Part shown: one piece after another, positions 4,680 to 26,787 of the stretch | Numbering within the stretch: position 1 is the first letter of the stretch | Layout of the letters: each line of letters opens with the position of its first letter | Source: Octopus sinensis | Lineage: Eukaryota | DNA length: 26,787 nucleotides | Direction: 5' to 3' | NCBI RefSeq assembly: GCF_006345805.1 | Contig: NW_021834067.1 | Coordinates: forward strand, 1-26,787 | Made by a program: the position numbers and the translations under genes | The notes under the pieces: generated by a model | The model's input: only the letters and a program-made list of their open reading frames with translations | What the model was told of the DNA's origin: nothing | The model's database searches: none

Positions 4680-6200
4680 ACAAATTTCGGAATCAGTTTA
4701 CTTTTAACCCTGGCTCGATTTTACAGTGGTTATGTACTGGGGTCACTTATCTGATTTCTAAAGTAGATAACCCTTCCGTCCCGACAGATTATTGTCCGAT
4801 TACCTGTATGCCTAATTTGTACAAGTTGATGACTAAGGTAGTGACTACTGAAGTCAGAAATTTCATGTAGGTGAATGGAATTCTGTCCGAGAACCAGTTA
4901 GGTACTCGATGGGATTGCCAGGAAGTTAAGGAGCAGGCACTGATCAACAAATACCTTGCGGGAGCCCACGGAAACTTACTAGTATCAATGTGGGTGGATG
5001 TGAAGAAGGCATATTACTCGGTTGACCATGCCTACTTTGTTGAGTGTCTGTGAAGACTCAAGTTGCCTTCATAGTTTATCAAATTTGTTGCAACTGTGAT
5101 GCACAGGTACGTGCCATAAGCGAGATTAAGCTAGAGAGGGGCATATTACAGGGCGACAGCATGTTTTCGTGGCTGTTTGTCCTCTGCTTAGAACCGTCGA
5201 GTAAAGTCCTCACTGCCCAATTTAAACAAAAGTCAATCGAACATGACGGAATGTGTTTTAACATCAACCATATCATGTTCATAAACGGCATTAAACTGTT
5301 CGCTTGGTCTTCAGAGACCCTCCTCTCAATGGGCAAAGCCTTGGAAGGTTTTATGAAGGGCCTGTGTCTGGAGCTTGAATACAACAAGTCGGCGACTGTG
5401 TGTGGTGACCTATTCAAAGTCTTGGAGGAGCACCAAAAGTATAAGTATCTTGGCTTAGTTGAAAGTCCAGCCTCATTAATCACACTTGAAATGAGGAAGT
5501 GTGTAGTTAGGGGTATCGTAGTAGGTTTTTTTAAAAGGGGCAGCAATGTAATGCAAAACTTGCCTCAATTCACGAAATTTATTTCATGCCTTGAACGAGT
5601 ACACCACCTCATTGTCTGAAGAATACTCCGAAAGAATCCCATCGACGTGTTGGCAAGCAATAAGGAGAGATTATACTTGTCTTGCGGGCAGTTAAAACGT
5701 GGACTGAGTAACGTCGTACACTTAAGTGAATGAATTCTTACTAAGATGCACGACACCTTGTGAAGTAGGTCAAGTTTATCCCAAAGGAAGGTTGTCATCA
5801 TTGCTTTTGAAAAAACGCGTGGTACACACCTTGGGACTATAAAAAACTACGTGTCGGCTAGGTATGGTCTGAATGCTACCCAAGTTAATGTGAATGAGTT
5901 GATCAAACTTCAGAGGGAATCCCTAATTAAAAAGATCAACTTAAAAGTCTTTCACAAGATTCTCTTTACCAGCCTGGACAACCCGCACATTGACGTATCG
6001 TCGTCATCAACGTGGCTGAAATATGGGAATAACTCTCCCCGATCAGAAGGGTTGTTCTCATATTTGCTGGATAAAAACGTAATGGTCAACGGAAACAGTG
6101 CAAAGACTGTAAATGGAAAGCGATGACTGTTGACCATTTAGCAACGAAGTGCGGGAGAATTCTGTACCATGATTACAAATAATGAGGTCCCACTGCAGAC
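4680..6200 (+). mobile_element. Degenerate R4/Dong-like (REL-endonuclease class) non-LTR retrotransposon, RT to CCHC region, truncated at both ends
   Basis: Motifs TGVTYLISK..DYCPITCMPNLYKLMTK, LSENQLG, VDVKKAYYSVDH, RGILQGDSMFSWLF, NHIMFINGIKLFA (catalytic DD changed to NG), YKYLG, ERLYL, SSTWLKYGNNSPRSEG and TVDHLATKCG. Multiple stops and frameshifts. Confidence 0.9.
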
Positions 6201-7119: not shown

Positions 7120-9110
7120 ATGACTGCTTTTGAAGGTAGTCATTAGTCTGTGAAATGGCTGATAGAAATGGGTGTAATTCCGGAAATAGCCAAGTCCATC
7201 TACAAACTAGAATGGGAGTAATTATACTGCTGTATTCCTTTCTCCAAACCTTCTAGGCCTTCTGTATTCCACTCTTGCAAGTAGTTTTCGAGTCACTTTC
7301 CACTGGAGTGACTCATTCAACCACAGAAAAGTCGCGTTGTGAGTGGAATAAAGCTGATTGTGACCCCGACTTGAGTTGAGGACTATTTCTAATTCTTAGG
7401 AATGGAAGGACTCGAGTGTTGTGCAGTAGGCAATCGATGGACAGGCTGTCGTTGTTCGTTTGGGACAAATCACACTGGTGGGGCCAATAATTGTTATCGT
7501 AGTTAAGAATGATGGGCTATGTCGAATTGGTTGGTCGACCAGACAAGCTGCACTGTGCATTGGACTTGATAGATTTAGTTTTGGATATGGTAGCACTGCC
7601 AAAAAGTCTACGAACCGACAATTTATGACATATGGAGAGGAATATGGTATCCACGATGTCGTCGGGTCTTTCATTGACCGAGATTTGGGTGTTATTCGAT
7701 TCACCAAAAACGGTTTTAGTGTTTACCTGCTCATAATTAGGCCGGGACCTCGGTTTGGCTTTTGAAATTCCAAAAAATTTAAAATTTGAAACATTTTATC
7801 CTGCCAGTGCTTTAAAAGTTGAATCGATTTATTAAATTAAAGTGTTGTCGCGTTAGTACTAATTTTGGACCATTTTCATCGGTATGTATTTCTGGTCACT
7901 CCAATAGAATTACCCTTCTCAGTTGGAACAGATGGTCGCACAGTCCCCTTCTCATACAGCCTCGAGGAGTCCCAGATCTCCTTTAGCCTTCATTATTGAG
8001 GTCTGTGTTTTATCACTATTTGTAGCCTTCACGAGAGTTAGTCCTTCAGGTAGGTTAGTACGATTAATCAGGTCAGACTTTTGCCCAATTGAATGACTTG
8101 GACATATTTGCCAAACATTCAGTTGTGTTGTTGGCTTATTCCTGCAGTTGTTTGTCGCTGACTGGAGGGGGGAGTGTCGAAGAACAGATGAATGAGTGTA
8201 GAGTGGGACAAGTATATATAATTATTGAGATTAGAATCACATTGTTGTTGCCACGGTGGGTAAATTGAAGGAATTTTTGGATTCGGACACTCTCAATACG
8301 CTGGGATGCAAATTCCTGATTCTAGACGAAGCCGACACATTGATCAACAGTTCAGACAGAGTGTGCTTGTATTACCAAAACATTTTATTACCAACAAACA
8401 CAACTCGTCGTCAAAATATAATTTGTTCGGCCACACTGCACAATCCATCAATTCGTCGATTTGCTAATCAAAGACTGCCGTTTGCCACCTTCATCGACCT
8501 CAAGAGAGAGGACAGTGTTCCCGAGACGGTTCATCAGATTGTAATCCGCGTTGTGCTCATTGCGGGTTTGTTTTGTGGACGCGGATGAGGACCGAGATTA
8601 CATGACATTTGCGAATCCAATCGCGACTGATAGAGTACACAAAATGACCCGACACGAGATATTTCCTGTATTTTTATGGCAGTATTCAGACGAGAGATCT
8701 CGAGGGGTCAAGTTACTGATGGGGATATACGTAGTGAGGACGATTGAGAGACTTGGGATAGATCGGGCGATTATATTCCGCAGGACTAAGCTTGATTGGG
8801 ACAATCTGCATGCTTATTTTGTTGGGATATATAATTGTATTTTAATTGGTGTATTTCAGCTGGGAGTCCTTTTGCCAGCAAGTTTAAATCACTGCCCTTC
8901 CATTCTGGGGAAAGTAGAAGGAATGAAAATTTGAGTGAGTTTCAGGTTTTTGTGTTTTAGTTAGTTTAGAAAGGAGGTGTTAACTTTCTCATTTCGACGG
9001 ATGTGGCTTGTCGTGGACAGTTGAACAGTTGCCTTTTGGTGTTATTTAATTTATAAATATTTAGTTATAAACATGACTCTCCCGGACGATCCTGCGAACT
9101 ACCTTCATCC
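7120..9110 (+). pseudogene. DDX1: DDX1 (DEAD-box helicase with SPRY insertion) pseudogene; Walker A exons missing, 3'-truncated in motif VI
   Basis: Starts MTAFEEMGVIPEIAKSIYKLEW. SPRY: DGLCRIGWST...FSFGYGSTAKKSTNRQF. Then IIEPSREL, FLILDEAD, ICSATLH, IDLKREDSVPETVH, AIIFRRTK, FLISTDVACRG and VINMTLPDDPANYLH, with many 21-30 nt introns. Lacks PTDIQ...AETGSGKT, has frameshifts near 8970-9020, and stops before HRIGRVGR. Confidence 0.92.
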
Positions 9111-11400: not shown

Positions 11401-11529
11401 GATTCATTTCTTCCTTCAGTCATTGCGTCGCATTTATCTTGGACAATTTCACGTTTCCATGCCCATATCTTCACTCTTGATTCATCAACTGCAGGGGGCT
11501 AAGGGAAGTTTGTGTCCAATCGACCGTAT

Positions 11530-11625
11530 ACAGGAAGCTCTATCTGCAAGATTCAACTGTTCTCAGTCTCAAGTTTCACGGATTTTTAAGAATAGGCAAG
11601 AAATTATGAAACTAATTTTGAAAAT
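11530..11625 (+). mobile_element. pogo/Tigger N-terminal HTH relic
   Basis: QEALSARFNCSQSQVSRIFKNRQEI resembles the CENP-B/psq helix-turn-helix of Tigger transposases. Confidence 0.55.
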
Positions 11626-11720
11626 AAGTGAAACCGACCGGAGGGAGACGAGCTGGCTCTTCCAGCGAATCTCGGTCGCGGTGCTCCGCGGGAACTGCCA
11701 CTCGATACGCAGCGCGGGGT
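11626..11720 (+). mobile_element. CRE-clade LINE C-terminal (REL) relic
   Basis: ETDRRETSWLFQRISVAVLRGNCHSI matches the CRE-clade terminal motif D.RE..WL.QR.S.AVQRGNA.SI. Confidence 0.6.
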
Positions 11721-12309
11721 CTTTGAGCTGACCACCAGGCTCTTCATAAACTCGTGTTAACTTTTTCATATTTTGTTTAAGAATCTAAAAAAAAGTGAAG
11801 CCTCTTTAAAGAAAATTAAAAACAAGAGGTTGAAAAAGAGTTCTGGAATTCGTACACACCGTCAATTAATTTGATACTTTTGTCAATTCATAATTGAAAA
11901 TAATAATTTTTTCTAAAAATGCTTTCTTGATATTGTTCGTCACTCAACAGAGTAACCTTTCCAGGAGGATTGCAATCACGTCAATCATCAAAACAACAAA
12001 TCTCGCTGAAATTTCCATATTTCCTTAGGAAGATCTCCGATGGACGTAACTCAACCTGCCGTATTTGATGACAGTTGGAGCCAAAGGGGCGTTTGCCTTT
12101 ATATTAATAGGCCTTTTAAATCGGTATATTAATTATCGATTTTTTTAACGGCTCGTATTCAACCGTATCTCATTGTGAACCGGTCACAATTAATGTTTTC
12201 GTGATCATCATTTGAATTTTTGATGAGAAATGTAAGTTTTAATGATCTCTAGTGGTCTAAAAGCTTCCGATAGCTCAACTTTTTTTTCAACATCACTTGT
12301 TTCCTAATT

Positions 12310-14354: not shown

Positions 14355-15690
14355 ATGTCTAATTCCCCATTATTAGTTTATATAAGAATAAGATTATATT
14401 ATACGATATAACTAAACCCAATAGACCACAAAATTCAGAAGAAACACAAAATTCAGAAAACATAATTAAAACGACCTCAGAAAATGCAATATCCATTACC
14501 GATAAGAATGGAAATGAAACTAAGAATTTCAAATTTTGCAAAATTTTCGATTAAAACTCATCTCAGGAAGAGATTTACAGCACAATTGTGACACCAGCTA
14601 TCTCCAAAGTTATCAACGGCTACAATTTTACTGTCTTTGCATACGGACAAACAGGTGCTGGGAAAACATACACAATGGAGGACGATTATAATGATCAAAC
14701 TTACAATGAGTGGCCAGTACTTTCACGTGCAGGCATCATTCCTCGTGCCGTTGGCGATATTTATCGAAAATTGAAAAAATGGTATTCAATCTGTCTATAT
14801 GTGCCATAGGACTGCTATACATCAATGAAACTGTCATTTCTTGAACTCTTTAACGAAGAATTGTATGATCTGCTTGCTAAAGAGGAGGAGAGTGACATTA
14901 AGCTTTCTGTATTTGAGGATTCGATGAAAAAAGTTATTTTTATTTATATTTTCGAAAGGGAGCTGTCATCATTAAGGGCTTAGTGAAGTCGTTGTGAAGA
15001 ATCAGAAGGAACTTTACCAAAAAATCAATCTTGCTTGACTCCGAAGAATAACTGCCGCTACTCTCAGCAATGATAAATCTAGGTTTGGTTATATTTTTAA
15101 TTTCAAGCCGATCACACACAATTTTTACTATAACTGTCCACATTCGACAGAATTTTGGAAATGGAGATGACTCAATTCAGCATTTATTTATTAATTGACT
15201 GTCATCAGGTGGATTTGCCAGAATCTGAAGAAAGTAGCCGAACAGGGAGTAGCAAGCAGAGAATTCGGGAGGCGGGTAATGCGGTGGTTTTAACTCTCAG
15301 CTTCCATAAATCAAAGTTTATTGACCTTGGGACGAGTTATTTATGCTTTGACTATCAAATCTCCCCATATTTCTTACCGAGAGAGCAAACTGACAAGAAT
15401 CCTCAAAGATTCATTTGGAGGGACCACTAAAACAGCAATGACAGTCAACATTTCCCCAGCTGGAAGTTGCCTAGAAGAGACAATCAACTCACTCGATTCT
15501 GCCAAAAGAGCACAAAATATTAAAAATACGCCTGAAAAGAACCCCAAAATAGAAAAAAGCCAGCTTACTCAGGTTTGTGATGGTGGATTGTGATTTTTAG
15601 TTGTACGAATTAGAGATTGCTTCTCTTAAGGCTGAAATGATGGACATTACTAACAAAAATTCACTTTATATAACTGACGAGCGATATCGG
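14355..15690 (+). pseudogene. KIF11: Kinesin-5 (Eg5/KIF11/BimC) pseudogene: motor domain plus neck, 3'-truncated
   Basis: [121 protein letters not shown]. Disablements: first intron donor GT>AT, in-frame TAA and TGA, a frameshift near 14980, DLAGSE changed to DLPESE, and loss of the KLNL segment together with its donor site. Confidence 0.92.
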
Positions 15691-16409: not shown

Positions 16410-17270
16410 CTATGACTTTTGAAGAATCATGAGACAATTCCATCTCAAGTAAGTACAACAGGGATTATCTTCACTTTAGCCAGATGAATCGCCCCTAATT
16501 CATTTGCCAAAAGGTCATATTTGTGGAACTTTTCCACTTCAACTTGCTTTAGGCAATTTTGTGAGGTAATCCCAACTTCAATGAGTGTAATTGTATTCCT
16601 CACCTTGTCATGGACAAAAATATCTGGTTTACCGTTTGAAACAGCCGTATCCGTAATAGTTGTGTCCACTCGAATTTCCACAACTTCATTGGCGACAACA
16701 GATTGAACTGAGTGAGTTTTTAATTTCTTCGTTTTTCTTATTCCGTATTGGCGGCATAAATGCAAATGTAGACATTTGACAATTTCATTATGCCGTCTTA
16801 GATAAGAGCTGTTCAGCATTCGTCCACATCTGGTAGCAAGGTGATCAACGATCTTCTTTGCTGAATTGCATTTATTTTCTCCGTTATCAAAAAACAAATT
16901 TTGATCCTGTAGTAGACAACACATTCCTTCAGTTCTTGCAGAGTTGTTTCCATGAACTAGCCACCCTGCAGATTCATTAACATTAACTTCAGTGTCCTTC
17001 AAACACTGGAAAAGAAAAGAATGCAATGGCTTAGTTTCAATCTGCCTAATTAGATATTCATGTTGAATTTCCACCAATTTCGTTATTGTCAGTTCATTTA
17101 TATTTTCGATATTGTACTTTCGGGATATGAATTCTACGATAGTGGCCATATGACTCAACTCATATGATATGAGTTTTCTTTGAATTAACGACCCGTAGAA
17201 TTCCCTTTCTTAGGCAGTAATCGGCTTTATGCTTCAAGTCATGATAAAATTGGAATAGCATTCGTTCAGA
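16375..17270 (-). mobile_element. R4/Dong-like non-LTR retrotransposon 3' part (CCHC plus REL endonuclease), degenerate
   Basis: ORF 16445-17158: SAGWLVHGNNSARTEG, VDHLATRC, RRHNEIVKC, KPDIFVHDK, LIEVG, EKFHKYDLLANEL, IIPVVLT*DGIVS*. Confidence 0.9.
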
Positions 17271-17863
17271 TTTGGGTAAGCCATTTTTAAAAGATAATTC
17301 AAATGCAATTTTTAATTAGAATAATTGATTAATCTACACTCTCCCATATATAAATTGCTATATTCAATACCTTTTATGTGGTTGTCATAAAAACACGTAA
17401 AAGGACAGGGTGCCCAAATCTGAATCTTGCAACTCAACGACCTCCGTAACCCACCGTCTGTGGTACACAGTATGAACCTTGTCAATCAGGCATTGGAGAG
17501 TCAGAAGATGTTCTTTAAGATTTGTGTTAACCATTTCTTGAGTCTTGGACAAGTCACCAACCACATTGTCTACGTTCCTTTTGTTTTTTCTTTTAGTAAC
17601 TTATGTAGATAAGTCGGATGATACAGAATTTCATTTCTTAGCAGAAACCAACATGGCCACAACAACAAGAAAATTAATAATTACTTTCTTAAATACTATA
17701 TAATCATATATCCTGCATTGGTCGATTCGCTGATCTAGATTATGAGAGCTAAAGGAGTGCTAATATAATTTCTTTATTTTAAGAGTGGCTTTAAGCAATA
17801 TTTTAATCAGGAAAGTTAGTGATAGAGAAAATAAAGTCCATGATTAGTTGATAGAGAAAATGA

Positions 17864-20147
17864 TTAGTTGAAACCGTAGTATTCAACGTCGTCAAAGTCC
17901 GCCACCTCGAATCCCGACAGTCCAAAGCCGGTGAATATTCCATTGGTCACGTTAGTTGTATTCGCATAGATCAAATTCCCTTGAATCCTGGCAGTAATGT
18001 TATTATTCTGGAACTCATATAATAATCAAACGTGTGCACTGAACCTCATCGTTATCCATTCGGGTACGGGCAGTGTGGTGGCGTTAGGAATCCGTGCAAT
18101 CAAGGACTGGCGTGCTAAGGGCGAGTCACAATTTGTGTGTACCCAAATCGTTGTAGATATATGCTTCGTTTAACTGAGTGTCGTAAAAAAAGAAAAGTCC
18201 TTCGGCATTGTAGATATTGATTTCTCGTTGAATCATTCGCAGCATTACGAACGGCATCACATTCAATTTGGGCAATATTTTCACTCTAACGGAAATCACC
18301 GAACTAAGTAGAAAAAGCATGCCAACTTGAGGGCGGACGGGGGGAGCATAACGAATGGTGTGTAGCAAGTAGCGGGTGTCCACAATGTGGGCGGCGCAGG
18401 CGCCATTTGACGGTAAAAACGATTCCCACTTTCCTCCATCACTTCGAACGACCCGCATTGTTGGGAAAGGTAGGGAGCCTCAGAGTTAACTTCAAGATGT
18501 TCAAAATTCTCAATGAAAATGTCGGGGAAGCTGGCGGAGGGCGGAATGCTGGGCAGAGTGATGTCGTTGGTGTCCCTCGTACTAAACGAATACACACAGT
18601 CCGGCTCGAATGTAAAACTGAATTCTCCGTCCACGATCTGGCTTATACACACAAATCAACCTCCACGTCCGCCATTTTGGCAAATTTGTCGCCATCGTTG
18701 GTCAACTTGGTCCTCCGAACGTGTAACACAGTATTATTCTTCGAGACTATGAACTTGTTGTTTATTACGGACTCGACTTCCTGAACAAGTAAACCAGCCA
18801 TGCAACCGTCGTCTCCACCAGAATTAAAAAGTCCTCTCGACTCGGACTGGCCAGAGTAACGTAGGACCCAAAGTCGGCAAACCCAGCAGATCTTTCCAAA
18901 AACACCCAATCCATATCCACGTGGTGTGTCACATGAGCTGGGCGGTTAGGTTCGCCAAGTCACCAATTTCGAAGAATGGGATCGTGACGGAGAAGTAGTT
19001 GCTCCAGGGCTCCAAAGCGCGGATGATTCCCGTTTCGTAGTTGGGGAAGCCCGGGTTGTAGGACGAGGTGAGGGACCACGCGAGGAATCCCGTTAGAGAG
19101 TGGTTGATGTAGTTCCTGTTGAATCTCTTAGAATATGCATAAAAATAAAACACAGCCACGAATCCGCCGTCGAACTTGTCTTCGGAGGCGATCTGGGGTT
19201 TTCCTTGAGAGTTGTAGTTGTAGTAGTTATTAGGGTAATGGAATCTGATTGGTAGACAAAAATCAACCCGACGATATCCACCAAATCGGCAAGTGTGGGA
19301 TCATTCTCCATATCCCGGTTGATGATGGGGACTCCGTCTACGATTATTTTAGTGTCCTGGCAGCATTGGCTAAGATTATCCCGCAGAATCTACTCGGCTC
19401 ATCCCACAGTCCAACCTGCATGCAGCTCTTGTTGTACAGTCTTTGATTCCAAATCTGTGAGTTAGTCCAGGAATAACCCCGATGGAGTCAATCGTCAAGT
19501 TGTGGTGTTTCTTCGCCCCAGTAATCCATTTGGTGGTGTAGTTCGCCAGTTTATGTTGATGCAAGTACATACCCTCCAGCCAGGAGGGGAAGCACCAGGA
19601 GAGTCCGCTCAGATGGAGTTTGTTATTTAACTATAAATTAAGGATAAAGACGACATCTTTGGCTTTAGTCATGATTTTCCACTCGTATCCTCGAAAGTAG
19701 TTTTCGTCGTGTTCGGTGTGCATGTGAGAGGCCTCACTGCCGCCTGGAGATGTGGCATTACTGGCTCACTTGAGGATTCACAGTCGCCCCCAATTTCGAC
19801 TTTGAGGATTTGCAGAGATGCTCCGTATTTGGGCTGAACTGATTTAATTAATGAATTACCCGGAAAAGTAATTCCATAATTTGGTGGAAATTGGAATAAT
19901 TGGTCAAATATTTGGATGTCGCCTAAGAATAAGTTGAGGAGAAACTACCTTGCCGCTGATTGCCCCGATCCCCATGTATTTCGAGGTGTTTTGGTCATCT
20001 AGGTCGATAACAGTGCTTGATTCCGAGATGCTGTTGTTACCCGAGTTGATCCCACTGAGGGATTGCCAGGTCTGACTGAGGGTTATTTGAGTTGATCACA
20101 AACGTGCATGCCAAAACTGTAAGGACAAGCAATTGGGTCGCTGCCAT
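17864..20147 (-). CDS. GALC: Galactocerebrosidase-like glycoside hydrolase family 59 protein, about 634 aa, 15 inferred introns of 23-28 nt, signal peptide; acid/base Glu replaced by Gln
   Basis: Manual splicing gives an unbroken frame from ATG 20147 to TAA 17866-17864: GIGAISG|ATS..LTNY, LF.PKYGASLQILKVEIGGD, GSEASHMH...DENYFRGYEW, GLSWCFPSWL, IG|IWNQR, HYP, ASED, AWSL..SY, EPWS, SEAP...Q.GSFE, FEVADFDD. All are collinear with animal GALC through to its C-terminus. One 27-nt intron is in-frame and stop-free, so it could be retained (+9 aa). Confidence 0.92.
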
Positions 20148-20520
20148 ATATTATGAATATTCTTATTGCTTTATAATTAGTCTATTCAAGTATACGTTTC
20201 ACCACTGAAAAAAAACAAAATTAAATAAATTTATTTTATATGGGAAAAGACGGAAGACATGTTTGTATAGCTACAGTTCCTCTATTCGGTGGGTGGTATT
20301 TTGGAGGATTTTCCCGACGTTCCTAGACGTGACGGTAAGCCAGAAAAGCACATTTAGGACTATAATCAGTCGATCATCAAAAGCACTAATCAGTCAATCA
20401 TCTCCTGTGACTTTATCTAACCATAACTAACAGCACCCATTTACATAAATATTTTCCTTTCCAAAAAGCGCTAAATATTATTAGGTCAGTCTGTAATTAT
20501 TTTTTAATTAACATTGCTCA

Positions 20521-20898
20521 ATGCATTGGCCACTTTGCTCACTTAACGAGGCTTTTGTGGAGGGGACTGATCCTCGAACTGTAAATGAAATATGTTCCTC
20601 CGTGTTGCTCAGACAGGACTTTATCACCACTGAGGAAGTAGAGCTACTGACCAAAGAGGTCCACTATCATCTAAAAAGAGCCAAATATCAAAACAACCAT
20701 TTGGATGATGTAAGATACACCACATGTAGGCCATTGTGGACTTCAGAAAACTGGAGAGACGGGACTGGTCTCCCCCATTTCCCCTATTACTCGTGCGAGG
20801 GAGACTGTCTTCAAGGAGACGGCGAAATAATGCCCTCCTTCCACGTGCTGGATTTGAGCGAGGATGGGTACATTAAGCCGCATGTGGACAGTCCGAGG
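20521..20898 (+). pseudogene. ALKBH7: ALKBH7 pseudogene fragment, 3'-truncated
   Basis: DFITTEEVELLTKEV...KRAKYQNNHLDD|AIVDFR...W...HVLDLSEDGYIKPHVDS matches ALKBH7 (YEYDHWDAAIHGFRE; HVLDLEARGYIKPHVDS). After a 20-nt intron at least two frameshifts are needed. Nothing follows the next donor site. Confidence 0.88.
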
Positions 20899-20905
20899 GT
20901 TAGAG

Positions 20906-20972
20906 AATAGTTGAGCATTTTAATCACAGAATTATTTTTAGAAAATAGTTGAGCGTTTTAATCACTGAATTA
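20906..20972. repeat. 29-nt near-tandem duplication at the ALKBH7 truncation point
   Basis: aatagttgagc(a/g)ttttaatcac(a/t)gaatta at 20906-20934 and 20944-20972. Confidence 0.85.
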
Positions 20973-23299: not shown

Positions 23300-23590
23300 T
23301 CTTTGCCTCTGTCGGTGGTGGGGCTTCTGAGGCCGATTGAGGAGTCCCCCCCGAAGTACGTCACATAAAAATTGTCCCTCAACAACCCCAACTCGTCTAC
23401 CAGGAATTGGATTGCCCACGCAGCCATTTCGGCCTTGAAGTAGTCCCCGAATGACCAGTTTCCCAGCATTTCGAACAATGTGTGGTGGTACGAGTCCTTC
23501 CCCACGTCGTCCAGGTCGTTGTGCTTCCCGCCCGCCCGAATGCATTTCTGGGAATTGACTGCTCGCTTGAGTTTCACAATTTTTGAAAAA
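23300..23590 (-). pseudogene. AARS1: Internal fragment of eukaryote-type alanyl-tRNA synthetase, truncated at both ends
   Basis: [47 protein letters not shown]...YVTYFGGD; neither the N-terminal DPTLLF.NAGM segment nor the downstream domains are present. Confidence 0.9.
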
Positions 23591-25129: not shown

Positions 25130-25480
25130 TAAATTTTTGTTTTCGGAGTTCCCCATGACTCTACTTTGATCGTCCCCGCCATGATCCTCAATCTTCTCTT
25201 AGGTTATCTATTGAAGTCACACCCACTTCAATAAGCCATATTAGGTTCTCTTTTTGTCATAGAGGAAAATGTGAGGTTTGTTATATTGTATTTTCAACTC
25301 TGTTGGAATTGTTGTATCAACTCGTATTTCTGCCATGGTGTAGCACATAAGACTCTGGACAGAGTGATTTTTCAGTCTTCTGGATTTTTTGAATACAAAT
25401 CTACGGCACAAGTGCATGTGGATGCATCTCACAATTTCATTGTGTATTCTTGTATAATCCGAATTTTCAATCAAATTAGT
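25130..25480 (-). mobile_element. R4-like LINE REL-endonuclease relic
   Basis: DYTRIHNEIVRCIHMHLCRR...HSVQS...AEIRVDTTIPTELKIQYNKPHIFLYDKK; paralogous to 16445-17158. Confidence 0.8.
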
Positions 25481-25984
25481 AACTTAGAAATTTCTGCGAA
25501 AAAAATATTAAAATCAAAAAAGTAATGAACAGAAAAAGAAAATAACCTCAAAAAAGTACTTTTTATTAAAAATTTCGAACGTGACCGATCTGGCCCCTCG
25601 ACCGGTCTGGACGGTGACATTATATAACTTCGCATTTACTAGACTTAAAGAAAAAAATTAAAAATATCAATGAAATTAATGAAGTAAATCTTATCAATCG
25701 TTTTTCTGTAAAACTTTATGATTTAACTTCAAATATCCAAGAGCCAAAAATAAAAAGCAGAAAGACTGTTTTCGGTCGTTTTACTTGTCTTCACGGCTTC
25801 TTGTTTCTTAATTGCAGTTCATTAGTGAATGAAATTAAAAATTATTTCAAAATTTCGACTTTAAAAACGGAAAAAAACAAATTAAAAACAAAATTAATCA
25901 TGATAGTGATAAATTTATTCATTTTCAGATTACTTAAGTTTTAATGAGCGCCAATAAAGTATTTATATTTGTTAATTAAGAGGG

Positions 25985-26060
25985 GTTTTGTTCGTTGTTG
26001 TACTGTTTAACACCTTCCCACACTGCGTAGCCAAATGATCAATTTTTTCCATCTTTCTTG
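25985..26060 (-). mobile_element. R4-like LINE CCHC micro-relic
   Basis: KIDHLATQCGKVLN, the same motif as at about 6130 and 16830. Confidence 0.6.
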
Positions 26061-26787
26061 TATTGGTCTCAAGAGGAAGCAGGCAATCCCTTGCTAAAGT
26101 TTTGAAAGCGCAGATCGCTGAATTCATGTCCAATTTCGAGTCCGTCCTCTGCCCCCCTACCGAAGGGACGCACAAAGTTGAAAGAAGCCCTTTAAAGGCA
26201 TCTGAGGCCGAAAGGTCACATTCAACTCCTCCCACAACACTCCCATTCAGTTCTACGACGTCATCCTCAACAAAGTTCCGGGAAGCGGAAAAAATTTGAT
26301 CACAATCCAAACCACGGACGAGGAGATCGCAGAATACGGAAGATTGAAGTACTATGAAACACACATCAACGGAAAATATTTTATGTCATATGACGGAGAG
26401 ATTGCACAGTTCGGCACATATAGAGTATTGAATGATGTATTTTACGTGGATGTGAACTACCTCGAATGTGGAATCCACACCAAAAGATGTATACAATTAC
26501 TGCACAGGTTGGGATATATTATTAATCCACTTGCTCACAAACCACGGGGGGTTCGAGTTTGTCACAATCACAGGCAGGAGTGCACTCGCACGGTTCCTGC
26601 ACTTCACAAGGCCTACTCTTTGTGAGGACTTGGGAGGCTGTCGTCGATTAAACACGCATTACTGTCATGTCCTCGACAAGGCAGGGGGCACGGACTGCAC
26701 GTGCATTACAAGTTCTAAAGGAGTGTGAGCACCTTCAGTTTATGCAGAATTGTTTTGATTGATAAGTGCTTTGTAGACACGATAGTC

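What the first reader, a model, noticed from the sequence alone, without database searches (positions are those of the whole stretch)
17864..20147. Intact secreted GH59 galactocerebrosidase homolog with the catalytic acid/base Glu replaced by Gln
Seen in sequence: the motif reads IWNQR (codon CAA at 19445-19443) where GALC has IWNER, while the nucleophile motif SED (GAA at 19183-19181) is retained. The beta-sandwich loop that carries the active-site Arg (KCIRP) is absent. The frame stays open across 15 introns. Established knowledge: GH59 is a clan GH-A retaining family using E182 (acid/base) and E258 (nucleophile), and in GH1 myrosinases a natural Glu-to-Gln change at the acid/base position marks a shifted mechanism and substrate. 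Inference: this is a pseudoenzyme or glycolipid-binding protein, an enzyme with altered chemistry, or a recent duplicate just starting to decay (GAA>CAA is one substitution).
Basis: partly seen in the sequence, partly recalled or inferred. Interest (0 to 1): 0.7.

Follow-up and report, generated by a model that had tools for sequence, protein, structure and literature searches.

The report
Galactocerebrosidase homolog missing catalytic acid/base
This is an intact, 16-exon gene for a very divergent relative of the lysosomal enzyme galactocerebrosidase in which one of the two catalytic glutamates, unchanged in all 137 relatives examined, is a glutamine, so the protein probably cannot cut galactolipids in the normal way; one sequence cannot show whether it now only binds them, uses other chemistry, or has just begun to decay.

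Summary
On the minus strand, 20147..17864 encodes a 635-aa protein in 16 exons separated by 15 GT..AG introns of 23-28 nt. It matches Pfam GH59 (1.7e-74) and mouse GALC (7e-73). The acid/base Glu (mouse E182) is Gln185 (CAA, 19445-19443). That column is Glu in all 137 other GH59 sequences that cover it. The nucleophile Glu256 and most of the galactose pocket (N184, W142, Y238, W282, W489) are kept. The Arg380 loop and both cysteines of GALC's single disulphide are gone, and Ser261 has no counterpart. Loop-less GH59 proteins with an intact Glu are common, so the missing loop alone proves nothing. The protein is the longest branch in the family. It keeps 73% of near-invariant positions, against a median of 98%. 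The reading frame, the splice sites and GC3 of 0.61 argue against long neutral decay. No paralogue lies in the window, and no close relative exists in the databases searched. Ultra-short introns, 38% GC and best TIM-barrel identity to molluscs suggest a dicyemid such as Dicyema japonicum. The most likely reading is a selected but hydrolytically disabled or repurposed GH59. Altered chemistry, very recent inactivation and a base-call error remain open.

The parts
17864..20147 (-). Complete CDS of the GH59 homologue: 16 exons, 635 aa, TAA stop ending at 17864.
   Evidence: Manual model. Confirmed by homologue-guided spliced alignment. Pfam GH59 1.7e-74. Mouse GALC 7e-73.
20088..20147 (-). Codons 1-20, MAATQLLVLTVLACTFVINS: a hydrophobic N-terminus that looks like a signal peptide.
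   Evidence: Read from the sequence. No predictor was run, so this is an inference.
18927..19978 (-). TIM-barrel catalytic domain, aa 49-323, introns included.
   Evidence: Pfam PF02057, profile positions 1-293 of 294. 48% identical to a mollusc GALC, 45% to a mammal, 40% to a bacterium.
19416..19454 (-). 39-nt micro-exon IWNQRLYNKSCMQ, flanked by introns 19477-19455 and 19415-19390.
   Evidence: The same two introns were found with three guide proteins.
19443..19445 (-). CAA = Gln185 at the acid/base position (mouse GALC E182).
   Evidence: The column is Glu in 120/120 plus 17/17. The role of E182 is stated in PMC4445328.
19181..19183 (-). GAA = Glu256, the retained catalytic nucleophile (mouse E258).
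19127..19153 (-). Intron 9: 27 nt, 22% GC, in frame and without a stop. If spliced, the segment after the nucleophile is 6 residues shorter than in GALC. If retained, it adds VFYFYAYSK. Either way Ser261 and Cys271 have no counterpart (Phe259 and Phe263).
18781..18806 (-). Intron 11, at the place where GALC carries the Cys378/Arg380 active-site loop. The loop is deleted (ETT|EVESVINN).
18464..18926 (-). Strongly remodelled beta-sandwich domain, aa 324-461.
   Evidence: Pfam PF17387 scores 23.8 bits, below the cut-off of 28. 24-25% identical to animal GALCs, against 46% between animals.
17885..18463 (-). C-terminal lectin domain, aa 462-629, including Trp489, which corresponds to the pocket residue W524.
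   Evidence: Pfam PF21708 4.6e-13..
17773..17778 (-). AATAAA about 86 nt after the stop codon (an ATTAAA lies at 17807-17802): a candidate poly(A) signal.
   Evidence: Pattern match only.

Best explanation
This is a real gene, kept by selection, that descends from an animal-type galactocerebrosidase. It lies in a fast-evolving genome with ultra-short introns, probably that of a dicyemid. The protein keeps the three-domain GH59 fold, the nucleophile Glu256 and the core of the beta-galactoside -1 subsite. It has lost the general acid/base (Gln185) and the Arg380 loop, the two elements that move in GALC to accommodate the leaving group. Without a general acid it cannot protonate a poor leaving group such as ceramide or sphingosine. 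Without a general base it cannot activate water to release a galactosyl-enzyme. Normal retaining hydrolysis of galactosylceramide should therefore be reduced by orders of magnitude. The most likely role is a non-hydrolytic or extremely slow protein that binds beta-galactosides or glycolipids in the secretory or endo-lysosomal pathway, that is, a pseudo-glycosidase. Shown: the gene model, the substitution, its uniqueness among the relatives surveyed, the pattern of kept and lost pocket residues, and the signs of selection on the reading frame. Inferred: loss of activity, ligand binding, cellular location and the source organism.
For: The acid/base column is Glu in 137 of 137 other GH59 sequences and Gln only here. 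E182 is the acid/base and E258 the nucleophile of GALC (PMC4445328). Of 36 strictly invariant family columns the protein keeps 32. Within the TIM barrel only D75E and E185Q differ, so the change is specific and not part of general erosion. Pocket residues N184, W142, Y238, W282 and W489 are kept, and T93 becomes Ser. S261, R380, C271 and C378 are lost. E182 and R380 are the residues that move to position the leaving group (PMC5764952), and R380 is catalytically critical (PMC4949656). Under simulated neutral substitution, the reading frame plus the 30 splice dinucleotides stay intact in fewer than 5% of runs at only 0.02 substitutions per site. Yet the protein differs from every relative at about 65% of residues. 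Almost all of that divergence therefore happened while the frame was under selection. GC3 is 0.61, between the AlaRS-like fragment (0.76) and a retroelement ORF (0.33). Several positions where Krabbe-disease mutations cause misfolding or disease are kept or conservatively changed: G41, G270, N279, P302, R515, Y319F and L618F.
Against: There is no orthologue, paralogue, read set or transcript, so when the Glu-to-Gln change arose, and whether selection has acted since, is unknown. The protein is an extreme outlier, keeping 73% of near-invariant positions against a median of 98%. That could reflect relaxed constraint as well as a new function. Three of the five residues that hydrogen-bond galactose 3-, 4- and 6-OH in GALC (G48, S261, R380; G48 aligns either with Gly57 or with a gap next to Lys58, depending on the alignment) are changed or missing, so galactose binding itself is not assured. 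Loop-less GH59 proteins that are presumably active exist.
Confidence: 0.45

Rival explanations
1. The protein is still an enzyme but uses altered chemistry. As in plant GH1 myrosinases, where the acid/base Glu is naturally Gln, it would act on a substrate whose leaving group needs no acid catalysis. Deglycosylation would use an external or substrate-borne base. Alternatively it would favour transfer to an acceptor over hydrolysis.
For: The nucleophile Glu256, Asn184 and Tyr238 are kept, which is what a covalent glycosyl-enzyme mechanism needs. The Gln-for-Glu precedent in myrosinase, with ascorbate as the base, is cited in PMC9632345. Removal of the R380 loop and the change at S261 reshape the aglycone side, which fits a different substrate. 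The frame and codon bias indicate a working gene.
Against: No candidate substrate, cofactor site or relocated acid/base can be identified from the sequence. No other GH59 with this substitution is known among 137 sequences, and none appeared in the literature searched. A pseudoenzyme is the commoner outcome of such a loss.
Confidence: 0.2
2. The gene was inactivated recently. It served as an ordinary, though fast-evolving, galactosidase until a late GAA-to-CAA change, and it is now an incipient pseudogene in a genome that is shedding genes.
For: A single transversion produces the change. The protein already shows unusually low retention of conserved positions. The window shows other signs of gene erosion: a DDX1 homologue apparently without its Walker A segment, and an isolated AlaRS-like fragment. 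If the source is a dicyemid, its genome is strongly reduced, with 5,012 genes (PMC6736024).
Against: There is no stop codon, frameshift or broken splice site across 16 exons. The simulation allows at most about 0.02 substitutions per site of neutral drift. GC3 remains high. The coordinated loss of the R380 loop and both disulphide cysteines shows that the active site has been changing for a long time while the frame was kept.
Confidence: 0.2
3. Base-call error, assembly error or a rare allele: the true or common codon is GAA, and the protein is simply a very divergent active GALC.
For: One base decides the matter, and no reads could be inspected.
Against: A random substitution error falling on exactly this base of a 26.8-kb window is very unlikely a priori (inference). 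The gene shows no other sign of sequence error. The neighbouring active-site features are independently altered.
Confidence: 0.07

Closest known systems
Galactocerebrosidase (GALC, EC 3.2.1.46; CAZy GH59; mouse structures 3ZR5 and 4CCC)
   Same: [quoted passage not shown] The alignment is full-length with E = 7e-73. The nucleophile Glu is kept, as are Asn before the acid/base position, Tyr238, the galactose-specificity Trp291 (here W282), Trp135 (W142) and the lectin-domain Trp524 (W489). The GIWN motif is of the animal type, and the TIM barrel is closest to molluscs.
   Different: The acid/base Glu182 is Gln. The Arg380 loop and the single disulphide (Cys271-Cys378) are absent. Ser261 is lost, and Trp255 next to the nucleophile is Ile. 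Overall identity to any member is only about 34%, whereas the eukaryotic members compared share 41-62% with each other.
Plant GH1 myrosinases (for example Sinapis alba and Arabidopsis TGG1)
   Same: They are clan GH-A retaining glycosidases in which the acid/base Glu is naturally Gln and the nucleophile Glu is kept (PMC9632345, citing Burmeister et al. 2000).
   Different: They belong to a different family (GH1), have a known activated thioglucoside substrate and use ascorbate as cofactor. Nothing comparable is known or testable here.
Pseudo-glycosidases such as GH18 chitinase-like lectins and the Klotho GH1 domains (from my own knowledge, not tested here)
   Same: They keep a glycosidase fold and binding groove after losing a catalytic carboxylate, and they serve as binding or signalling proteins.
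   Different: They belong to other families. Binding by this protein has not been demonstrated. I found no GH59 pseudoenzyme in the literature library searched.
Loop-less, mostly bacterial GH59 proteins (for example P0013, P0035, P0071, P0076)
   Same: They lack the Cys378/Arg380 loop and Cys271, as this protein does. Their beta-sandwich domain is the one most similar to this protein's (35% against 24% for animals).
   Different: All keep the acid/base Glu. They carry GGWNE or GGRNE where this protein has GIWN, and they often carry extra ricin-type domains.

Membership tests
CAZy GH59 / Pfam Glyco_hydro_59 (sequence family) | Significant match to the GH59 catalytic-domain profile above the curated cut-off. 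| tested here: met
   PF02057: 251 bits against a cut-off of 27, profile positions 1-293 of 294.
CAZy GH59 / Pfam Glyco_hydro_59 (sequence family) | C-terminal GALC lectin domain. | tested here: met
   PF21708: 50 bits against a cut-off of 27.
CAZy GH59 / Pfam Glyco_hydro_59 (sequence family) | Central beta-sandwich domain. | tested here: inconclusive
   PF17387: 23.8 bits, below the cut-off of 28, and only 28 residues matched. HMMER nevertheless aligns the region to mouse GALC along its whole length.
Active GH59 retaining beta-galactosidase / galactosylceramidase (EC 3.2.1.46) | Catalytic nucleophile Glu (mouse E258). | tested here: met
   Glu256, GAA at 19183-19181.
Active GH59 retaining beta-galactosidase / galactosylceramidase (EC 3.2.1.46) | General acid/base Glu (mouse E182). 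| tested here: not met
   Gln185, CAA at 19445-19443. The column is Glu in 137/137 other sequences.
Active GH59 retaining beta-galactosidase / galactosylceramidase (EC 3.2.1.46) | Galactose-binding residues G48, T93, W135, N181, S261, W291, R380 and W524. | tested here: inconclusive
   W135, N181, W291 and W524 are kept. T93 is Ser. G48 aligns with Gly57 or with a gap next to Lys58, depending on the alignment. S261 and R380 have no counterpart. Residue roles are taken from PMC4445328.
Active GH59 retaining beta-galactosidase / galactosylceramidase (EC 3.2.1.46) | Measured hydrolysis of galactosylceramide, psychosine or 4MU-beta-galactoside. | not testable with these tools
   Needs recombinant protein.
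Myrosinase-like mechanism (acid/base Gln, external base) | Gln at the acid/base position with the nucleophile Glu retained. | tested here: met
Myrosinase-like mechanism (acid/base Gln, external base) | A substrate with a self-sufficient leaving group, and a cofactor such as ascorbate acting as base. | not testable with these tools
   No substrate or cofactor site can be inferred from the sequence.
Myrosinase-like mechanism (acid/base Gln, external base) | Membership of GH1. | tested here: not met
   Only GH59-family Pfam domains were found.
Pseudo-glycosidase / lectin-like protein | Loss of a catalytic carboxylate while the fold and aromatic binding residues are kept and the gene stays under selection. 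| tested here: inconclusive
   The loss and the retention are shown. Selection on the frame is supported only indirectly. dN/dS could not be computed for lack of orthologues.
Pseudo-glycosidase / lectin-like protein | Ligand binding without turnover. | not testable with these tools
   Needs binding assays.

The most novel reading that the evidence does not exclude
This would be the first natural GH59 that works without a protein acid/base. It would be a galactosidase or transgalactosidase of a cephalopod parasite that, like myrosinase, uses a substrate-borne or small-molecule base on an activated or unusual galactoconjugate taken up from the host. Alternatively the retained nucleophile would trap galactolipids covalently.
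Probability: 0.15. Interest if true: 0.75.

Novelty: new variant of a known kind. Interest (0 to 1): 0.45.

Why it matters
GH59 is a small family, best known because loss of GALC activity causes Krabbe disease. In every sequence I could survey, both catalytic glutamates are invariant. A naturally occurring member that has been kept by selection and carries Gln at the acid/base position would be a ready-made substrate-trapping variant. It would be the first candidate pseudoenzyme or altered-mechanism enzyme of the family. It would also give a view of how an extremely reduced parasite reuses a lysosomal hydrolase scaffold. If the gene turns out to be merely decaying, the finding is an ordinary case of gene loss caught at an early stage.

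Tried and rejected
1. A minimal-intron path search gave a wrong model. My first manual model had two wrong splice sites, at introns 3 and 15. Both were corrected.

No 3D model was therefore made.

3. An exact look-up of the exon-13 ORF found nothing on record.

4. A word-indexed search with the C-terminal half gave no hit at all.

5. An exhaustive phmmer search of exon 13 against 1.84 billion representatives gave nothing better than 36-40% identity. No orthologue is available for dN/dS.

6. A search with the AlaRS-like fragment, meant to identify the organism and to test database coverage, gave only 56-75% identities from unrelated taxa. The source organism is therefore absent from the protein database, and the absence of GH59 transcripts there says nothing about expression.

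7. The supplements of the Dicyema genome paper do not mention GH59 or GALC.

8. A neighbour-joining tree placed the protein between the eukaryotic and bacterial clades on the longest terminal branch. I regard this as long-branch attraction and not as evidence of horizontal transfer, because the TIM barrel is closest to animals.

9. Rejected: a non-standard genetic code.

10. Rejected: a hidden exon that encodes the Arg loop, since the gap is only 26 nt.

11. Rejected: a tandem paralogue in the window.

12. Rfam and tRNA scans of the window found nothing.

Full report
OBSERVATION

The minus strand of 17600-20400 was read and translated in three frames. The coding pieces are interrupted every 40-310 nt by very short GT..AG segments. 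A hand-built model gives a 1908-nt CDS from the ATG at 20147 to a TAA ending at 17864. It has 16 exons and 15 introns of 23-28 nt and encodes 635 aa.

I wrote a protein-to-genome spliced aligner and ran it with three GH59 homologues as guides. It recovered the same introns, including both that flank the 39-nt exon IWNQRLYNKSCMQ (19454-19416). Gln185 is CAA at 19445-19443, and Glu256 of ASED is GAA at 19183-19181. CAA also encodes the invariant Gln480, so the code is standard.

Three splice choices are ambiguous:
- The intron 2 donor may be 19948 or 19945.
- Intron 9 is 27 nt, in frame and stop-free, so retention cannot be excluded. Its 22% GC argues that it is an intron.
- Intron 11 has an alternative at 18794-18772.
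None of these affects residue 185.

FAMILY

Pfam finds Glyco_hydro_59 (1.7e-74, full length), the GALC lectin domain (4.6e-13) and only a sub-threshold central domain. The PDB search finds mouse GALC (3zr5, 4ccc) at 7e-73, aligned over residues 38-628. GIWNQR lies opposite GIWNER, and ASED opposite SSED. In GALC, E258 is the nucleophile and E182 the general acid/base (PMC4445328).

HOW UNUSUAL IS THE GLUTAMINE?

- Among the 120 best homologues (animals, a sponge, a slime mould, many bacteria) the acid/base column is Glu in 120 of 120.
- Among 69 further, more diverse representatives from an exhaustive search, 17 cover the column, and all have Glu.
- In an HMM-registered alignment there are 36 strictly invariant columns, and the protein keeps 32. 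In the TIM barrel only D75E and E185Q differ.
These samples are the sequences most similar to the query, not the whole family.

THE REST OF THE ACTIVE SITE

I mapped the residues named in the GALC papers through the alignments.

Kept:
- W135 as W142
- N181 as N184
- Y238 as Y238
- E258 as E256
- W291 as W282
- W524 as W489

Conservatively changed:
- T93 as S100

Changed or lost:
- G48 loop: SGKATS or SGKVATS in place of SGGGATS. G48 aligns with Gly57 or with a gap next to Lys58, depending on the alignment.
- S261: the segment after the nucleophile is 6 residues shorter, or carries an insert if intron 9 is retained.
- The whole loop carrying C378 and R380.
- C271, now Phe, which is the disulphide partner of C378. 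PMC4949656 describes this as the single disulphide, which stabilises a critical active-site loop.

E182 and R380 are the two residues that move to position the leaving group (PMC5764952). Both are gone.

A caveat applies to the loop. 43 of 120 homologues lack the Arg380 column. About 32 of them, mostly bacterial, also lack Cys271; the other 10 still have Cys271 and are probably incomplete models. All keep the Glu. In 10 further homologues Arg380 is replaced: Tyr in six annotated invertebrate sequences, Trp in three unnamed ones and Lys in one marsupial. Loop loss alone does not imply inactivity.

DIVERGENCE

The protein is 32-36% identical to every homologue, whether animal, slime mould or bacterium. 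The eukaryotic members compared share 41-62% with each other. It keeps 80 of 109 near-invariant columns (73%). The median for the others is 98% and the minimum 83%. It has the longest terminal branch in a neighbour-joining tree, 0.40 against a median of 0.10.

By domain:
- The TIM barrel is closest to a mollusc (48%), then a mammal (45%), then a bacterium and Physarum (40%). This fits descent from an animal-type GALC.
- The beta-sandwich is only 24% identical to animals.

IS IT A LIVING GENE?

Three observations bear on this.
- There is no stop codon, frameshift or broken splice site in 16 exons.
- In a simulation of neutral substitution, the frame plus the 30 splice dinucleotides survive in 24% of runs at 0.01 substitutions per site, 5% at 0.02 and 0.2% at 0.05. 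Indels were ignored, so the real figures would be lower. Nearly all of the large divergence must therefore have accumulated under selection for an open frame.
- GC3 is 0.61. The AlaRS-like fragment has 0.76, DDX1 exons 0.46, a KIF11 exon 0.37 and a retroelement ORF 0.33. The window as a whole is 38% GC.

A TATAAA lies upstream and an AATAAA downstream of the CDS (pattern matches only).

These data cannot date the Glu-to-Gln change, which could be recent.

RELATIVES

- tblastn with four homologues finds only this locus in the window.
- A word-indexed search with residues 330-635 found nothing.
- phmmer with exon 13 against 1.84 billion representatives found nothing better than E = 4.9e-8 at 36-40% identity.
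- A control search with the neighbouring AlaRS-like fragment found no identical or near-identical protein. The source organism is therefore simply not in these databases.
Paralogues, orthologues and dN/dS, which are the tests that would decide the matter, could not be done.

SOURCE ORGANISM (INFERENCE)

- Introns of 23-28 nt with splice signals reduced to little more than GT and AG are reported in animals only for myxobolid myxozoans and Dicyema japonicum (PMC13644364).
- The window is 38.4% GC and carries retroelement ORFs.
- D. japonicum is 36.7% GC, 49% repeats and rich in LINEs (PMC6736024). Henneguya salminicola is 29% GC.
- The TIM barrel is closest to molluscs.
A dicyemid is the best guess but is not proven.

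INTERPRETATION

A retaining clan GH-A glycosidase without its acid/base has two handicaps. It cannot protonate a poor leaving group such as ceramide, and it cannot activate water to clear the glycosyl-enzyme. This follows from the established mechanism described.

Because the -1 subsite and the nucleophile are kept while the aglycone-side elements are lost, I favour a selected but hydrolytically disabled or repurposed protein (0.45). The rivals are:
- Altered chemistry on the myrosinase model, for which the Gln-for-Glu precedent is given (0.20).
- Very recent inactivation in a genome that is losing genes (0.20).
- A wrong base or a rare allele (0.07).

I found no report of a GH59 pseudoenzyme in the literature library. 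I class this as a new variant of a known kind, of moderate interest, limited by resting on a single sequence.

Noticed in passing
window 7147-9108 (+): A DDX1 homologue is present, with a SPRY domain and DEAD and SAT motifs. The spliced alignment finds no counterpart of human residues about 25-54, which hold the Q motif and the Walker A motif AETGSGKT. The sequence reads NGSNYTAAF where GSGKTGAF is expected, and the N-terminal MGVIPEIAKSIYKLEWE lies in another frame with no intron that could join them. It may be an ATPase-dead DDX1, a decaying gene or an indel error.
   Followed up: partly
window 23323-23583 (-): An isolated 86-aa fragment resembles cytoplasmic alanyl-tRNA synthetase (human residues about 62-148, 63% identity, GC3 0.76). 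Neither tblastn nor spliced alignment finds any other AlaRS-like piece in the window. It could be a gene fragment, a pseudogene relic or a misassembly.
   Followed up: partly
window 16445-17158 (-), 5851-6126 (+), 25244-25483 and 25972-26364 (-), 5044-5619 (+): There are several ORFs of a repeated element. Three of them share a similar segment by eye (for example ...GWLVHGNNSARTEG... and ...TWLKYGNNSPRSEG...), and 5044-5619 gives a weak reverse-transcriptase match (RVT_1, 20 bits, below the cut-off). They are probably LINE-type retroelement remnants flanking the GH59 gene.
   Followed up: partly
window 14555-15690 (+): A kinesin-5 (KIF11/Eg5) motor-domain gene with the same 19-31-nt introns. 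One exon gives a strong match (E = 1.4e-22) to human KIF11 over 78 aa. My automatic model still contains one stop codon, so it needs manual curation.
   Followed up: partly
window 19127-19153 (-): Intron 9 of the GH59 gene is 27 nt long, in frame and without a stop. Retention would insert VFYFYAYSK just after the nucleophile segment without breaking the frame. This is a possible alternative isoform that only RNA data can settle.
   Followed up: no
protein P0141 (405-aa GH59 fragment from the representative library): This fragment has Ala at the nucleophile position (LWASADY where LWASEDY is expected). It may be another natural GH59 catalytic-residue variant. It is incomplete and does not cover the acid/base column.
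   Followed up: no
window 11423-11731 (+): This ORF gives a weak match to the helix-turn-helix of DDE (Harbinger/PIF-type) transposases (HTH_Tnp_4, 24 bits, below the cut-off of 27).
   Followed up: no
window 20521-20910 (+): A 129-aa ORF is transcribed divergently, about 370 bp upstream of the GH59 start. It has no Pfam match. From memory it resembles an AlkB-type dioxygenase (ALKBH7-like), but I did not test this.
   Followed up: no
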